Shown here: positions 128-9,135 of the stretch, piece after piece
Numbering within the stretch: position 1 is the stretch's first letter
How the letters are laid out: each line of letters opens with the position of its first letter
From: Vitrella brassicaformis CCMP3155
Lineage: Eukaryota > Protista > Chromerida
DNA: 9,956 nucleotides
NCBI GenBank assembly: GCA_001179505.1
Contig: CDMY01000933.1
Span: 1-9,956, forward strand
Direction of reading: 5' to 3'
Notes under the pieces: generated by a model
What the model was told of the DNA's origin: nothing
The model's database searches: none
Seen by the model: the letters and a program-made list of their open reading frames with translations, nothing else
Made by a program: the position numbers and the translations under genes

Positions 128-282
128 GTGACGGCACACCTGATGCACGTAGAGATCTCATACAAGCGACATCAGCGACGCACACAGCCAGATGGTCGTC
201 ATGTGGAAGCTACGATGCCTCTCTGTTTGCCCTTGTTTACCTGGCTTTGCCATTCTTTGCCATCGGACAAGCGAGTGGGGCC
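128..282 (+). repeat. Diverged direct repeat, copy 1 (copy 2 at 686-796)
   Basis: 128-197 vs 686-755: 66/70 identical. catgtgga is shared at 200-207 and 762-769. 256-282 vs 770-796: 24/27 identical. Copy 1 carries about 48 extra bases rich in tttgcc. Confidence 0.92.
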
Positions 283-1243: not shown

Positions 1244-1812
1244 TCGGCAGTTGGGCAGATCCTAACAGGTCTGTCTATCATCCGCCTGTCGGCAGTCTGT
1301 CTGTGCAGCAGCCTGTCAGCAGCCTGTCTATCGTCTGTCTGTCGGCAGCTGATAGATCCTAACCGGTCTATCAGTCCGCATTCTCTCGGTGGTATCGACC
1401 CCGCAAGACATCCTNNNNNNNNNNNNNNNNNNNNNNNNNNNNNNNNNNNNNNNNNNNNNNNNNNNNNNNNNNNNNNNNNNNNNNNNNNNNNNNNNNNNNN
1501 NNNNNNNNNNNNNNNNNNNNNNNNNNNNNNNNNNNNNNNNNNNNNNNNNNNNNNNNNNNNNNNNNNNNNNNNNNNNNNNNNNNNNNNNNNNNNNNNNNNN
1601 NNNNNNNNNNNNNNNNNNNNNNNNNNNNNNNNNNNNNNNNNNNNNNNNNNNNNNNNNNNNNNNNNNNNNNNNNNNNNNNNNNNNNNNNNNNNNNNNNNNN
1701 NNNNNNNNNNNNNNCAGCAGCCTGTCTATCATCCGCCTGTCGGCAGCTGACAGATCCTAACCAGTCTATCAGTCCGCATTCTCTCGGTGGTATCGGCCCC
1801 GCAAGACATCCT
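1244..1812. repeat. Internally repetitive leader spanning a 300-N assembly gap (1415-1714)
   Basis: 1317-1414 and 1715-1812 are 98-bp copies with 6 mismatches. Shorter tcggcag..agatcctaac..gtctatc units also occur at ~1244-1295. Confidence 0.9.
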
Positions 1813-3389: not shown

Positions 3390-4861
3390 TGCGAAGACTA
3401 CGGATACACGTAATACTATGCATCCATGTGTAGAACTTGTCTCAGTCATGTCTCTCTGTCTTTCTGTCATGTTCGCTTTTTGTCTGGGGAATGGTCGTCG
3501 TAGAGAAGTGCTAATTCGACTGTCTCCAGCTTCGGACTTGGCAGAGTCTTCTCCTTGTCCACACACGTCCAGTGCCCACTGCCGGGCACGACTCAAAGAT
3601 GGGACGACACTGGGAGAAAGCCTGTGGAAAGGGAAAAGAAACCTTGTGTTTTGTACATCGTAAACATGCTTACAGCTTCTTTCTCCTTGCTCGAGCTCTC
3701 CCAAGCCCAACTGCATTGACACCCTTCAGCCCCCTTGCCGCATCACAGAGAACCTCCTTCCGGCCCTCAACATGACTCTTCAGACCGCCTGCGCCGCCAT
3801 GGGAGGCACGTATGGCAATGGCGGCCTACGGGGCGCGTGTTGCAGTGGCGACTGTCTTATTTTGTGGGGAGCAGGAGCAGCAGCAAGGAGCCACGTGCTC
3901 GGCTGAGGCCATTCTCGAAGCGGGCAATTTCTGCTTCGATGAAGGAGGTCCGCCGTGTATTGTGACTCAAGCGGATCTTCTCAAGGCTGCTGTAAATGGA
4001 ACGGAGGCCCCCTCTTCTCTTTGCGGCAGTGAGGACCCACTGCCATGTGTGATGGAAGAGTGGCCAATCTCCGCAATCAGACAAAGATGGTCAAGACAGC
4101 GGGTGTGCGAGGAATTTTCAGGGGGTCTGTTTCACTCTCGTCGGGAGGTATGCTGCCCGTTGGAGTGCGGCGTGTGTGGGGGCGAGGGCTGCTCGCTGCG
4201 CGCCAACAACCGGCCTGACCTCTGCTGCAGCAAGGAGATTCGGAGGAGAGGGATAGATGGTCTTTGCTCCAGGACGCAATCGACACCATGCATTGTGGAC
4301 ACGGAAATGGTGGACATGGTGGCACAAGTGGAGACAACCTTGTTGCCACAGCTGCAGGGAGAGTTCTCTGCCGTTGGTAGACCTAACGAATCTCCTTGTC
4401 CGGCTCCTTTGTGTGAACGGACACATGTATGTGCGCACCCATACATGAATGGAGATCAAGGATGCTGTGCGAGGGAGAGCTGCAGGGTGTCTTCGATGGC
4501 AAAGAACAAGCATGCTGCCTGCAGTCGTATACCGATGGTTGCCCAATGTCCCAGGACATCGGCCAGAAGTGCGAGCGGAATGCGTCCCTGCCCTGTGTGT
4601 TCCAAGTGACAAAGGAACAGTAGTGTGAGGTATGAACTAAGACATTGTCCACATTTGTGGAAAGAATGCTTTCTTTGCCGTCAGGACATAGCACTCGGCG
4701 AGTATGATCCTGAGACGGGTGCCTGCTGTGCCCGTCAGTGTGGGACCTGCACAGATGATGACAACTGTGCCGCTTGACCTGGCGGAAGCGACCAGTGCTG
4801 CCCCAAGCTGATCTTGAAAGACGAAATTGACTGTCAGCACACGAAGTGGGCCCCGTGTGTC
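3390..4861 (+). repeat. About five Cys-rich protein modules, consensus roughly C-x3-4-G-x(5-9)-CC-x3-C-x2-C-G-x(n)-C(C)-x3-I-x(n)-C-x6-PC-(V/I)
   Basis: Copies: 3390-~3738 (YCEDYG..., ...NCIDTLQPPC; middle unresolved); 3790-3964 (CAAMGG..GACCSGDC/FCGEQ..TCSAEAILEAGNFCFDEGGPPCIV, across the frameshift); a half-module near 4020-4050 (LCGSEDPLPCV); 4106-4297 (CEEFSGG..VCCPLECGVCGGEGCSLRANNRPDLCCSKEI..LCSRTQSTPCIV); 4468-4599 (CEGELQG..ACCLQSYTDGC..KCERNASLPCV); 4624-4861 (CE|DIALG..ACCARQCGTC..NCAA*PGGSDQCCPKLI..DCQHTKWAPCV). Confidence 0.82.
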
Positions 4862-5226
4862 TCGACACAGGCCCGTGACGATCAACTCATTGCATCCACA
4901 CCCCAGCCTACTGAGGTGGCTTGCATACGCATCATACGTTTATGGAGGTCTGCATGTGTTTCTTCAGGAGCCCGCCTCTGTGACGACGACACATGCACCG
5001 ACAGAGGTGTGCATACTACCTAGCCAGTGTACCGGTCACGATTCGCATACACATTTCTGCGTCCGTGTGCCTCTGGCTGTCATTCCCCTCCACAGGTGCC
5101 TCTTGATGTCGACGGAGTCCCAAAGTCGAAGGACCTTTGTCGGCCTGTGCATCCATCGAAGAAAGGTGGATAACATATTGTATTGCATCCGCTGCGATAC
5201 ATATTTGCGCTCTTGTATGACTACAG

Positions 5227-6880
5227 GTGGCCTTCGTGACCTTGGCAACGGCGCGCATATGTACTTCGGCTATGCCGTCAAGGTAGACAGCTTTGTGCAT
5301 TCATGTAAGTACCCCTTTGTGTCACAACTGCACTTGCAGACCGGATTGTTCGGCAACTTGAAGTACATGAAGATCCTGGGAGAGCAGTCCAGCCTCGTCG
5401 TGGCTGAATACGAATGTACGCGCGTACACAGACCCGGCCTGGTGTTGTGTGCTATGGCAATGTGTAATGTGAACAGGCAAGATGGACGTTACGCAACCAC
5501 GGCAAGGAGTCTATGACTGGGGAGACTGTGATGCCATCGCTCAACTCGCTGACAACCTCGACCTTCGCTTCATACACTGACCTGGCATCGTGCGGTGGGT
5601 GTACGATGTATGCAAATGAGGGCGCTTTGTTATGCCTGCGAATACAGATGCCCGGCTGGATGCTCAATCGGCCGCCACGGAAACGGAGGGGCATCTTATA
5701 AGATCACATAGAGAAAGCCATGGAGCACTTCCGTGACAATCCCAGCCTTTGGTCCATCGACGTTGTCAATGAAGGTTCGTCCGGCCCAGTCGCATGCGCG
5801 TGTGAACTAGTTATGTATGTATGTATGTACATTCATGCAGTCCTTTCTGACGACCAGCCCATCCCGAAGCAGCCCAGGCTGAGAGAATCCTACTGGACTA
5901 AGATGGCCGGTATCGACGACTGGCCAGCTCTGGCGTTCAGGTGTCTTGAACACAAGGATGGACGCGCAAACCACGTGTATGTATTTTTCCACACAGAAAA
6001 GCCAAGCAAATAGCTAGGAACCGAAACAAACTTCGGTCGATCATGAATGAGTATGGAATCAACTCCGTTGCGCGACAAGGGGTCAGAATGCAAACCTTCA
6101 CGCAACAGCGCGCAGTCCATATCCGGATGTATGTGTGTATGTATGTAGGGCTGGCGGAAGGCTGACGCCATGTACCACTATTGCCGGCAGCTGCGCAAAA
6201 AGGGGGTGCCTGTGGACGGTGTGGGTGTGCAAGCCCACATAAACATTGCTAAGCGCGACTTCCACGGTATGTAACCCTCCACGCCCTCATACAAGCGAGC
6301 ATGTCCGGACCCTACGCGAGTGTACGCCGCATATAGGTGTGCGGAAGCAGTTCAAGCGCTTGGGCGAGATTGGCCTGGAAGCTCAGATAACTGAGGTAAC
6401 TCACGGCAAATTGCCCTAATTCGACGTCTTGCTTTCCTTTGATTGTACTCTCCTTTGCTCCTCCAGCTTGATGTATCTTGCGGTCACTGGCACGGCAGCC
6501 GATTCAAAGCATGCGATGGCATGAACGACCTCATGGAATTCATGCAGATGGGCACAGACACATGCAGGAATGGGCACTTGCGTGCACGTGCCTATGTGTG
6601 CACATATGCGTCTCTCCATGATTCTATGTGTGCAGGTCGAGGCATACAAGGCCATGGTCCGCGTGTGCATGGACGCGGCCAACTGCACAGGTCACAAATT
6701 GACACATGCACACGTAAAAGCATTTCATAAACATTTCGTCCAGGTGTCGGCGTGTGGGGCGTCTCCGACGATGGGTCTTGGCTACATAGCGAGTCGCGCA
6801 ATGAGACGCCGCTCCTCTTCGATTCCAGCCTGAAGAAGAAGAGGGCCTTTTATGGCGTCAAGGAAGCCATGCAGACGTGA
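5227..6880 (+). other. GH10 catalytic TIM-barrel domain (within the pseudogene)
   Basis: GH10 motifs appear in the expected order: GLRDLG..MYFGYAV; YMKILGEQSSLVVAEYECKM; QPRQGVYDWGDCDAI; HTLTWH; WSIDVVNE (acid/base Glu, 5771-5773); MNEYG; GVPVDGVGVQAH; QITE|LD (nucleophile Glu, 6393-6395); Q|VEAY..VRVC..C; VWGVSDDGSW; PLLFDSSLKKKRAFY. Confidence 0.93.
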
Positions 6881-7621: not shown

Positions 7622-9135
7622 TCATACAATTTCAACCATTGCGTCTGGGGTGTATATTTGAAGATCTCCCTGTGGGTACCCTGGCCCTCCACCGACAACG
7701 AAAATGTGTTGTATGGGCACGCCCGCCACAGCTGCAGCTGCAGTCACTCGCACCAGCGCACATACCCGATGCTGAACGATTCCTTTACCGTCTCGATATC
7801 ACCCACCGGTAGCTTTCGCCGCAATGGGCAAATCTTCCCCTCTGATCCACCTCCTGTCACTTCCCCGAACATCGTCACAATCTGCTTGCGCTATGCGATC
7901 CAGTAGACTGAGAACACCCACTGGGGCGTTCAGTACGGCCCGAACTTTCTGATACTCGCTCTCGCGTCTCTCGCAAAGACTGCTAGAGGCTAGGAACTCG
8001 ACGGAGGTCAGCGGAGTACCGTCGTACTCCCCTCCCACGGTTACGAGATACTTATTATCGATAACCACGACTCCATGCGCTGCGCGAGGCTGATTCAGAC
8101 GTGGGCCCTCATGCCAGCTCATCGTCTTGCGGTCGTAAATATAAACCTCCCCTTTCTCAAGATGACCCTCTCCCCACCCCCATCTGCCTGCCACTACCCA
8201 GATACCCTCGTCGAAGACGGCGGCAGCGATATGCTCAAGGTGCACCGGTGGGCCATCCCTCTCACCCCACTCGTTGGTCGAAGGATCGAACACCATCATC
8301 GAAGGGATGGGGACTTCAGCGCTGAGGTTTGGCCTCACACCATCATCTTGCATGCCACCAATCACGTAGATAAGGCCGTCATATGTGACCGCTGCTCCAG
8401 CCGCTCGTGTTCTAGGCATGTTCGGTAGCTCAGAAATGCTGTCACTCGTGATGTTATACAACCAAGCGCTGGCAGTGGCATGGTCTCCCAGTTCGCCATC
8501 AATGCCTTCAATACACTTGTGCATTCCAGCCCTTCTCTCTTTCTCTCTACTGTGTTGAGTCACCTCCAACGATGACGAAGGCGTCATTAGCCGGCGAGGG
8601 GTAAACACTTGCCATGACATGGTGTCGACTCGCCGGCAGTGGAGACAGGTCAGTCCACTCGCTCGTTTCAGGATCGAAGGCCCTGATCTGATCCATGGCC
8701 CGTCCTTCACTTCCAATGTATCCTGACCGATGAACACCAAGAAATACAGTGTAGAAGGGATCCCATGAGCTCTCACCTCCGACAGCATATATTTTGCCCT
8801 GAGCCATCAATGCCGCATGATCCCAATGATACGGATACGGCATTGATGGCCCCTGTTGCCATGACCCGCCGATGATGTTGCACGGGACGGAGGGGAGGCT
8901 CTTGAGGGGAACAGGCTTGGACAAGCCGCTTATCTTGACAGCCCATGACTCTGAAGCTCCATTGGCCGAACACAACTCAAGCCACCGATCCGAGTCGGTT
9001 CCTTGAAGCACGCGAGGGGCGGCACCAACATACCAGGGGACCCCACCTAACGACCGCAGAGGAGGGGACAGACAAATACTCTCACGACATGAACAAGGCG
9101 AACTTACCGATCAGAAGAGCGAGAAGGAGTGTCAT
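7622..9135 (-). CDS. Intact 426-aa Kelch-repeat (six-bladed beta-propeller) protein with a predicted signal peptide
   Basis: Exons 9135-9108, 9046-8777, 8722-8564, 8505-7807 and 7746-7622 total 1281 nt (427 codons including the stop), all with GT-AG introns of 54-61 nt. The N-terminus is MTLLLALLIGGVPWYVGA. Six blades end in GG/AG: KIYAVGG, FVIVGG, LIYVIGG, IWVVAG, YLVTVGG, HIFVVGG. They carry Kelch W..(G/L)P.(M/L)P and FDP...W motifs. The last intron is the least certain. Confidence 0.88.

What the first reader, a model, noticed from the sequence alone, without database searches (positions are those of the whole stretch)
3390..5006. Array of unassigned disulfide-rich modules placed like carbohydrate-binding modules on a GH10 enzyme
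Seen: about five copies of a ~50-65 aa module of up to 9 Cys (C..GG..CC...C..CG...C..RPGG...CC...I....C......PC). They lie between a signal peptide and a Pro/Thr linker (STPQPTE-EPASVTTTHAPTE) that leads into GH10. Established: signal-CBM-P/T linker-catalytic domain is the standard layout of secreted glycanases. The Cys spacing does not match CBM1, CBM14, CBM18/hevein or EGF as I know them. Inference: this may be an undescribed or poorly described eukaryotic polysaccharide-binding module. Some copies are complete, one lacks the central CG..C segment, and one is a half-module.
Basis: partly seen in the sequence, partly recalled or inferred. Interest (0 to 1): 0.75.

Follow-up and report, generated by a model that had tools for sequence, protein, structure and literature searches.

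The report
Decayed xylanase gene with unnamed cysteine modules
This is a broken (pseudogene) copy of a secreted xylanase-type gene of the alga Vitrella whose front end carries a real, widespread but still unnamed 10-cysteine module that in intact relatives sits on wall-sugar enzymes, so the module is worth testing as a sugar-binding unit but this copy makes no full protein.

Summary
The modules are real. The unit is about 60 aa with 10 invariant Cys (not 9). One copy here is complete (4106-4291). Three others and two tail pieces are degenerate. A Pro/Thr linker and a multi-exon GH10 follow.

The window is a whole 9,956-nt scaffold of Vitrella brassicaformis CCMP3155. The gene on it is a pseudogene. 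Compared with its paralogues it alone carries three nonsense codons (TAG 4621, TGA 4775, TAA 5699), a 7-nt deletion in GH10 and a frameshift in module 1. The signal peptide is not confirmed.

The module has no match in Pfam, in PDB sequences or in PDB folds, although the model is confident (pLDDT 93.9). A profile finds 1,348 protein clusters, in brown algae, diplonemids, Vitrella and marine metagenomes.

Partners include:
- carbohydrate-active enzymes: GH10, GH26, CE4, alginate lyase, beta-helix;
- WSC and PAN domains;
- proteases, LRR, TSP1 and EGF.

No aromatic residue is conserved, so a sugar-binding role is plausible but unproven.

The scan had already noted this module on other Vitrella DNA (s1-233270, s1-231054).

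I searched exon by exon and built no joined spliced model.

The parts
3418..3507 (+). Unconfirmed as an exon.
   Evidence: Read directly. Not conserved with paralogues. Window 3400-3633 is 78-86% like two fragments on C585, which has no GH10 or module hit.
3712..3738 (+). Tail (last two Cys, C..PPC) of a module whose N-terminal part is missing here.
   Evidence: Aligns with the C656 paralogue. C656 has the N-terminal part of that module in an upstream exon.
3790..3855 (+). Module 1, N-terminal half, reading frame 0.
   Evidence: hhalign to module profile positions 1-20. tblastx to C656.
3856..3862 (+). Approximate site of the frameshift inside module 1.
   Evidence: The two halves align to one continuous 237-aa ORF of C656 but lie in different frames here. 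Net length difference is 14 nt.
3863..3958 (+). Module 1, C-terminal half, reading frame 1. Two of the ten Cys are lost.
   Evidence: hhalign to profile positions 37-58. tblastx to C656.
4022..4048 (+). Tail of a degenerate module. Its N-terminal part is present in C287 and C656 and absent here.
   Evidence: Paralogue ORFs. tblastx.
4106..4291 (+). Module 2: the only complete copy, 62 aa with 10 Cys.
   Evidence: Profile E 1e-14. 72% and 63% identical to C287 and C656 copies. AlphaFold2 model pLDDT 93.9.
4468..4596 (+). Module 3: centre deleted, 6 Cys left, one Cys changed to Tyr.
   Evidence: tblastx to C287, where the module is complete. hhalign to profile positions 4-17 only.
4621..4623 (+). 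Nonsense codon TAG just before the first Cys of module 4.
   Evidence: C785 and C287 both have TAC (Tyr) here.
4624..4858 (+). Module 4: first Cys codon 4624-4626, exon end 4629, GT-AG intron 4630-4684, remainder 4685-4858.
   Evidence: Profile E 6e-8 with one TGA inside. Intron position shared with C785 and C287.
4775..4777 (+). Nonsense codon TGA inside module 4, at the conserved 'RPGG' position.
   Evidence: C785 has GGA and C287 has CGC at this codon.
4886..5006 (+). Pro/Thr-rich linker in two small exons (4886-4915 and 4968-5006), separated by a 52-nt GT-AG intron.
   Evidence: Sequence read. The paralogue C287 has a longer P/T linker at the same place.
5227..6880 (+). GH10 catalytic domain in about 10 small exons, ending at TGA 6878-6880.
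   Evidence: PF00331 hits over the cut-off at 6155-6262 (36.4 bits) and 6743-6865 (36.9 bits), and weaker hits at 5473-5577 and 5702-5776. Colinear with C287 and C785.
5571..5572 (+). Site of a 7-nt deletion (frameshift) inside the GH10 'R..HTLxWH' motif.
   Evidence: C785 has 7 extra bases and reads the motif in one frame. C287 also reads it in one frame.
5699..5701 (+). Nonsense codon TAA inside GH10.
   Evidence: C785 has TTA and C287 has CTC (Leu) at this codon.
5771..5773 (+). Codon of the GH10 acid/base Glu (in ..DVVNE), still present.
   Evidence: Sequence. Aligned with C287. The assignment of the residue rests on general knowledge of GH10.
6393..6395 (+). Codon of the GH10 nucleophile Glu (ITE | intron 6396-6466 | LD), still present.
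   Evidence: tblastx to C287, where ITELD is contiguous. Frames.

Best explanation
Shown:
- The window is a complete small scaffold of Vitrella brassicaformis CCMP3155.
- It carries a decayed paralogue of a family of secreted, multi-exon proteins. These proteins consist of tandem Cys-rich modules, a Pro/Thr linker and a GH10 domain.
- This copy cannot give a full-length protein. It has three nonsense codons, two frameshifts and internal deletions that its paralogues lack.
- Its nearest relative, on scaffold C785, is decaying independently.
- The module is a unit of about 58-62 residues with ten invariant Cys. Its pattern is C-x4-GG-x8-CCPxxCGxCGGxGC-xxRPGG-x3-CC-x3-I-x7-C-x5-PPC.
- It belongs to a large family with no Pfam model found here, present in brown algae, diplonemids, chromerids and marine metagenomes.

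Inferred:
- The ten Cys form five disulfides that hold a small, stable alpha/beta knot outside the cell.
- In intact relatives the modules are strung on Pro/Thr linkers next to wall-active enzymes and lectin-like domains.
- They most likely hold or space the enzyme on the cell wall or extracellular-matrix polymer, like a CBM. The conserved Arg/Gly loop, rather than an aromatic platform, would be the contact surface.
For: Organism: hits P0098, P0103 and P0105 are Vitrella CCMP3155 proteins on contigs whose lengths equal C571, C220 and C908. The scaffold length is 9,956 nt.

Pseudogene:
- TAG, TGA and TAA stand where C785 and C287 have sense codons.
- A 7-nt deletion lies inside the GH10 motif.
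- Module 1 is frameshifted relative to the continuous ORF of C656.
- Modules 1 and 3 have lost Cys.
- No protein of 146-464 aa in the 5.8-billion-cluster collection matches ORF 3812-4606.
- C785 has its own lesions.

Family:
- 46 module hits at about 24 own-genome loci, six of them next to GH10.
- 1,348 clusters at E<=1e-3 and 225 at E<=1e-10, with up to 14 copies per protein.
- Taxa identified.
- No Pfam family covers the module in any of the 150 relatives.
- Model pLDDT 93.9 with no PDB match.

Partners. An intact module-GH10 protein exists: CEM23853.1, with GH10 at E 8e-71.
Against: - The lesions rest on one draft assembly of a small scaffold with a gap. I could not map reads or RNA.
- The catalytic Glu codons are intact, so the decay is recent or partial.
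- For the CBM-like role, no conserved aromatic residue exists.
- Many partners are not carbohydrate-active (subtilase, reprolysin, LRR, TSP1, EGF, Sushi, TIG), and most relatives are bare module arrays.
- No formal enrichment test was run, because the script machine was lost.
- Disulfide pairing was not read from the model.
Confidence: 0.72

Rival explanations
1. The module is a general structural or protein-binding extracellular unit, used like EGF, TSP1 or Sushi repeats as a rigid disulfide-bonded spacer or protein-protein contact. It is not a glycan binder. Its presence on carbohydrate-active enzymes only reflects that these are secreted multidomain proteins.
For: - It co-occurs with PAN+TSP1, subtilase+EGF, trefoil, Sushi, LRR, TIG, reprolysin and CAP domains.
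- Most relatives are arrays of modules on P/T linkers with no catalytic domain.
- No conserved aromatic residue.
Against: - Seven of 10 mid-length three-module relatives carry alginate lyase, CE4, beta-helix or WSC.
- Six own-genome module loci adjoin GH10.
- In CEM23853.1 the module lies directly before GH10.
Confidence: 0.33
2. The gene is functional. The stops and frameshifts are assembly or sequencing errors on a poor small scaffold, or are bypassed by splicing that I did not see.
For: - The scaffold is only 9,956 nt and contains an N gap.
- Both catalytic Glu codons and one perfect module are kept.
Against: - There are five independent lesions of different kinds: TAG, TGA, TAA, a 7-nt deletion and a net 14-nt difference.
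- There are also Cys losses and deletions of module parts.
- Three lesions lie inside conserved motifs, where paralogues have exon sequence.
- The nearest copy, C785, is also broken.
Confidence: 0.06
3. The decayed locus still yields a short secreted module-only protein. One candidate starts at the internal ATG at 3812 (265-aa ORF), which begins with a hydrophobic stretch and contains the intact module 2.
For: - ORF 3812-4609 is open.
- Module-only proteins are the commonest architecture in the family.
Against: - The ORF start lies in the shifted frame of module 1 and is not conserved.
- No matching protein of 146-464 aa is on record.
- The ORF's C-terminal third reads through what is intron and another frame in the paralogues.
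Confidence: 0.07

Closest known systems
Small disulfide-rich carbohydrate-binding modules appended to glycanases (CBM1, CBM18/hevein, CBM14) and the WSC domain
   Same: - Size of about 35-90 aa, held together by disulfides.
- Often tandem and joined by Pro/Thr/Ser linkers to secreted wall-active enzymes.
- The module co-occurs with WSC in 7 of 112 relatives.
   Different: - No sequence match to any of them in Pfam at E<=1.
- Ten Cys in a different spacing.
- No conserved aromatic residues.
- No fold match in the PDB.
- Binding is untested.
Vitrella brassicaformis CEM23853.1 (UniRef name 'endo-1,4-beta-xylanase'; P0098) and the module-GH10 paralogues on C287, C656, C573 and C785
   Same: Same module family immediately upstream of GH10, same genome, same short-intron gene structure.
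   Different: - CEM23853.1 is intact (GH10 E 8e-71, positions 1-309 of 311) and also carries three PAN domains.
- The window copy is broken in five places.
- It shows no conserved N-terminal part upstream of 3676. At the matching point, C656 continues upstream with a further module.
GH10 (Pfam PF00331) endo-beta-1,4-xylanases
   Same: Exon-wise PF00331 hits, two of them over the cut-off. The acid/base (VVNE) and nucleophile (ITE-LD) Glu codons are present.
   Different: The reading frame is interrupted by a 7-nt deletion in the HTLxWH motif and by a TAA. The substrate is unknown.
Promiscuous extracellular Cys-rich repeats (EGF, TSP1, Sushi, PAN/Apple)
   Same: Tandem use and a wide range of partner domains in secreted or surface proteins. 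It occurs together with them in Vitrella proteins.
   Different: No sequence relationship detected. The Cys count and spacing differ.

Membership tests
Pfam-modelled Cys-rich modules (CBM_1, CBM_14, Chitin_bind_1/hevein, EGF, WSC, PAN, TSP_1, ShK, granulin) | Significant match to the family's profile HMM | tested here: not met
   No family at E<=1 for any of the five module-bearing pieces. In 150 relatives no Pfam family covers the module; WSC, PAN and TSP1 hits lie elsewhere in those proteins.
Any structurally characterised CBM or other solved domain | Sequence or fold similarity to a PDB chain | tested here: not met
   - Profile against 177,635 PDB sequences: only a spurious E 3.7 hit.
- Foldseek PDB: 0 hits at E<=10.
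- VIA-align against 48,161 chains: none with Z>=2.
- For a 62-residue domain this is weak negative evidence.
CAZy CBM families without a Pfam or PDB representative; InterPro, SMART and CDD entries | Match to the dbCAN or InterPro member-database model | not testable with these tools
   No dbCAN or InterPro library was available. Source names of relatives are 'unnamed protein product', 'Uncharacterized protein', or names taken from other domains.
Carbohydrate-binding module (functional class) | Demonstrated binding of the isolated module to a glycan | not testable with these tools
   Only context is available: partners GH10, GH26, CE4, alginate lyase, beta-helix and WSC.
Carbohydrate-binding module (functional class) | Conserved solvent-exposed aromatic residues forming the binding face (typical of CBM1, CBM14 and hevein) | tested here: not met
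   The invariant or near-invariant positions are Cys, Gly, Pro, Arg and Ile only. An aromatic residue after the GG is frequent but not conserved.
The unnamed 10-Cys module family defined here (alignment A1) | Ten Cys in the spacing C-x14/15-CC-x3-C-x2-C-x4-C-x10-CC-x12-C-x7-C, with the GG, CGxCGG and PPC motifs | tested here: met
   Window 4106-4291 has all ten and scores E 1e-14. Copies 1, 3 and 4 meet the pattern only in part.
GH10 (PF00331) | Profile match over the curated cut-off, with both catalytic Glu residues | tested here: met
   36.4 and 36.9 bits against a cut-off of 22.1. Glu codons at 5771-5773 and 6393-6395.
GH10 (PF00331) | Uninterrupted coding sequence across the (beta/alpha)8 domain | tested here: not met
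   7-nt deletion at 5571/5572 and TAA at 5699-5701, against intact C785 and C287 sequence.
Pseudogene | Disabling lesions at positions where close paralogues keep an open frame | tested here: met
   Three nonsense codons and two frameshifts.
Pseudogene | Lack of expression, or lesions confirmed in raw reads | not testable with these tools
   No read or RNA data were available. There is no matching protein of 146-464 aa on record.

The most novel reading that the evidence does not exclude
The 10-Cys module is a new family of glycan-binding modules that lacks conserved aromatic residues. It would be shared by brown algae, diplonemids, chromerids and other marine protists. It would target enzymes such as GH10, GH26, CE4 and alginate lyase, and also adhesins, to wall or matrix polysaccharides through its conserved Arg/Gly-rich loop.
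Probability: 0.35. Interest if true: 0.7.

Novelty: new variant of a known kind. Interest (0 to 1): 0.45.

Why it matters
If the module binds glycans, it would be a new CBM family. It would help annotate over a thousand currently unnamed proteins in brown algae, diplonemids and relatives of apicomplexans. It would also give a handle on how these organisms target wall-remodelling enzymes.

The Vitrella GH10 expansion has at least 18 loci. Some are intact, one appears catalytically dead and two are decaying. It is a small natural series for studying the birth and death of modular wall enzymes in a relative of apicomplexan parasites.

This particular locus matters only as the decayed end of that series.

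Tried and rejected
- Pfam on all module pieces and on 150 relatives: no family covers the module.
- PDB sequence profile, Foldseek PDB, VIA-align wide and BFVD viral structures (best E 1.3): nothing.
- ESM Atlas on a paralogue ORF and on a module-array protein: no usable hit.
- Word search with window ORF 3812-4606: no protein of 146-464 aa.
- BLASTP of short GH10 exon pieces against CEM23853.1 was uninformative because the pieces are too short.
- Literature: seven searches and four papers opened. None described the module.
  - The 'CGXCGG' string turned up only as the amoebozoan integrin-beta stalk repeat, which has a different pattern.
  - The brown-algal EsV-1-7 Cys motif is a different, intracellular motif.
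- Stop-codon reassignment was rejected. All three stop types occur, and paralogues have Tyr, Arg/Gly and Leu at those sites.
- I first thought the GH10 'WH' motif had mutated. That was wrong. I had been reading intron sequence, and the motif lies in the preceding exon, in another frame.
- Not done because the script machine was lost:
  - an own-genome census of partner domains by ORF scanning;
  - disulfide geometry from the model;
  - dN/dS;
  - a formal enrichment test.

Full report
**What the window is**

The window is a complete scaffold: G000:C933, 9,956 nt. The genome is 72.7 Mb in 1,064 contigs. Three profile hits are proteins of Vitrella brassicaformis CCMP3155. They lie on contigs whose lengths equal those of C571, C220 and C908. 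The organism is therefore Vitrella, a photosynthetic relative of apicomplexans.

The gene is on the + strand and has many small exons, with GT-AG introns of about 50-70 nt. I worked exon by exon, by reference.

**The observation**

Six-frame reading and a search of the own genome with the best copy show a repeated unit. An alignment of 19 copies from 13 loci (A1) gives ten invariant Cys plus the GG, CGxCGG, RPGG and PPC motifs, over 58-62 residues.

In the window:
- Only 4106-4291 is a complete copy (profile E 1e-14).
- 4697-4858 also scores (E 6e-8) but contains a TGA.
- Module 1 is split between frame 0 (3790-3855) and frame 1 (3863-3958) and has lost two Cys.
- Module 3 (4468-4596) lacks its centre and keeps six Cys.
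- The two 'half-modules' (3712-3738 and 4022-4048) are tails of modules that are complete, or more complete, in paralogues.
Part of what was read there as module is intron.

The supposed signal peptide (3418-3507) is hydrophobic but is not shared with paralogues. It lies in a stretch that is 78-86% like two fragments on contig C585, which has no GH10 or module hit. I treat it as unconfirmed.

**The gene is broken**

A DNA search of the genome found a closer paralogue than the protein search had: C785:14769-16541, 78-92% identical. Codon-level alignments with C785 and with the more distant C287 give four lesions:

| Window position | Window | C785 | C287 |
|---|---|---|---|
| 4621-4623 | TAG | TAC | TAC |
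| 4775-4777 | TGA | GGA | CGC |
| 5699-5701 | TAA | TTA | CTC |
| 5571/5572 | 7 bases missing | present | motif read in one frame |

The 7-base deletion lies inside the GH10 'R..HTLxWH' motif.

The fifth lesion is in module 1. Its two halves align to one continuous 237-aa ORF of C656, but they lie in different frames here, with a net length difference of 14 nt.

That makes five independent lesions, plus lost Cys and deleted module parts. All three stop types are involved, so a changed genetic code is not an explanation. Lesions of such varied kinds, with the deletions, are unlikely to be assembly errors, though I could not check reads.

Both catalytic Glu codons survive (5771-5773 and 6393-6395), so the decay is not ancient.

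C785 is itself broken, in different ways:
- It starts inside module 3.
- It has a 2-nt deletion at the first exon of module 4.
- One Cys is changed to Phe.
- An acceptor AG is changed to AC.
- It lacks about 500 nt, so that module 4 runs straight into a GH10 exon.

So there are two independently decaying copies, both on small scaffolds. No protein of 146-464 aa matching the longest window ORF is on record.

**The module family**

A profile search in the own genome gives 46 hits at about 24 loci. Six of these adjoin GH10 hits: C933, C785, C287, C656, C571 and C573. The genome has at least 18 GH10 loci.

Against 1.84 billion representative proteins, the profile finds 1,348 at E<=1e-3, 225 at E<=1e-10 and 20 at E<=1e-30, with up to 14 copies per protein.

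Identified sources:
- brown algae: Ascophyllum, Nemacystus, Cladosiphon, Pylaiella, Ectocarpus, Choristocarpus;
- diplonemids: Rhynchopus, Diplonema;
- Vitrella;
- MMETSP transcriptomes and marine metagenomes.

No Pfam family covers the module, either in the window pieces at E<=1 or in the 150 best relatives.

The AlphaFold2 model of window module 2, built with A1, is confident (pLDDT 93.9, pTM 0.77; the five models range from 71.6 to 93.9). It shows a hairpin plus short helices. It has no match by:
- Foldseek in the PDB;
- VIA-align over 48,161 chains;
- BFVD;
- PDB sequence profile.

For so small a domain these blanks are weak evidence, but they agree with each other. The literature searches found no description.

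**What it may do**

Partner domains among the 150 best relatives:
- Carbohydrate-related: WSC 7, CE4 deacetylase 5, GH26 3, beta-helix 3, PAN 3, alginate lyase 2, GH10 1, alpha-amylase 1, malectin and F5/8C.
- Others: LRR 4, TIG 3, subtilase, reprolysin, kumamolisin, CAP, multicopper oxidase, Kelch.

Most relatives have no other domain and are module arrays on P/T-rich linkers.

I also took ten mid-length proteins with about three modules, chosen without regard to annotation. Seven had a carbohydrate-related partner: alginate lyase 1, beta-helix 1, WSC 2, CE4 3.

In Vitrella the module sits:
- directly before GH10 in the intact CEM23853.1, which also has PAN domains;
- in a PAN+TSP1 protein;
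- in a subtilase+EGF protein;
- in proteins that UniRef names P-type (trefoil) domain-containing (CEM08115.1) and Sushi domain-containing (CEM37770.1).

My reading is that this is a secreted, disulfide-knotted accessory module, often attached to wall-active enzymes. A CBM-like anchoring or targeting role is the most likely single function (about 0.35-0.4). A purely structural or protein-binding role is nearly as likely (about 0.33). The lack of any conserved aromatic residue counts against a classical CBM face. The conserved Arg-Pro-Gly-Gly loop is the obvious candidate surface. That last point is inference only.

**Earlier notes of this scan**

Two follow-ups on other Vitrella DNA (s1-233270 and s1-231054) had already described 'undescribed cysteine-rich modules' in expansin-GH10 proteins.

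I checked parts of this myself:
- CEM23853.1 has PAN domains, the module and an intact GH10.
- The C656 paralogue has further upstream modules.
- In one ORF of C656, the GH10 motifs that normally carry the catalytic residues are altered.

So the module is not a first sighting for the scan. What this report adds is its wide distribution, the partner census, the structural blanks, and the finding that this locus and C785 are pseudogenes.

**Limits**

The script machine was lost. As a result there is no disulfide geometry, no dN/dS, no formal enrichment statistics and no systematic ORF scan around the remaining own-genome loci. dbCAN, InterPro, read data and RNA data were not available.

**Verdict**

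- The locus itself is a pseudogene.
- The module family is real, widespread and apparently unnamed, and it is a reasonable candidate for a new accessory (possibly glycan-binding) module.

Noticed in passing
L044 (G000:C785:9500-19499), C785:14769-16541: A second decayed copy of the same gene, 78-92% identical to the window. It is 5'-truncated inside module 3. It has a 2-nt deletion, a Cys-to-Phe change, a lost acceptor AG, and a gap of about 500 nt that joins module 4 directly to a GH10 exon. Its lesions differ from those of the window.
   Followed up: partly
window 7802-9011, minus strand: A Kelch-repeat gene (Kelch_1 E 3e-16 and 2e-9) in two overlapping ORF pieces (7802-8788 and 8550-9011). 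This suggests an intron or a frame change between them.
   Followed up: partly
window 1317-1812: An N gap (about 1415-1714) is flanked by 98-nt direct repeats (1317-1414 and 1715-1812, 94% identical). The assembly gap therefore sits inside a tandem or dispersed repeat.
   Followed up: no
window 128-197 and 686-755: A 70-nt direct repeat, 94% identical and 558 nt apart, of unknown nature.
   Followed up: no
window 3400-3633; G000:C585:44132-44214 (+) and 44290-44458 (-): The stretch holding the supposed signal peptide is 78-86% like two oppositely oriented fragments on C585. That contig has no GH10 or module hit, so this may be a low-copy repeat rather than a first exon.
   Followed up: partly
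L003/L021 (G000:C656:61200-67400, minus strand): Two tandem GH10-like units lie downstream of a long module array. In one ORF the usual GH10 motifs read MPLVTWG and MDVAAD instead of the forms that carry the catalytic residues.
   Followed up: partly
own genome: GH10 is strongly expanded in Vitrella: PF00331 hits at 18 or more loci on 17 contigs.
   Followed up: no
P0001 (Rhynchopus euleeides, 2,487 aa) and P0025 (Diplonema papillatum KAJ9455754.1): Diplonemids (Euglenozoa) carry 10-14 copies of the same module in giant proteins. The family is thus shared by stramenopiles, alveolates and euglenozoans, a patchy distribution that might reflect gene transfer.
   Followed up: no
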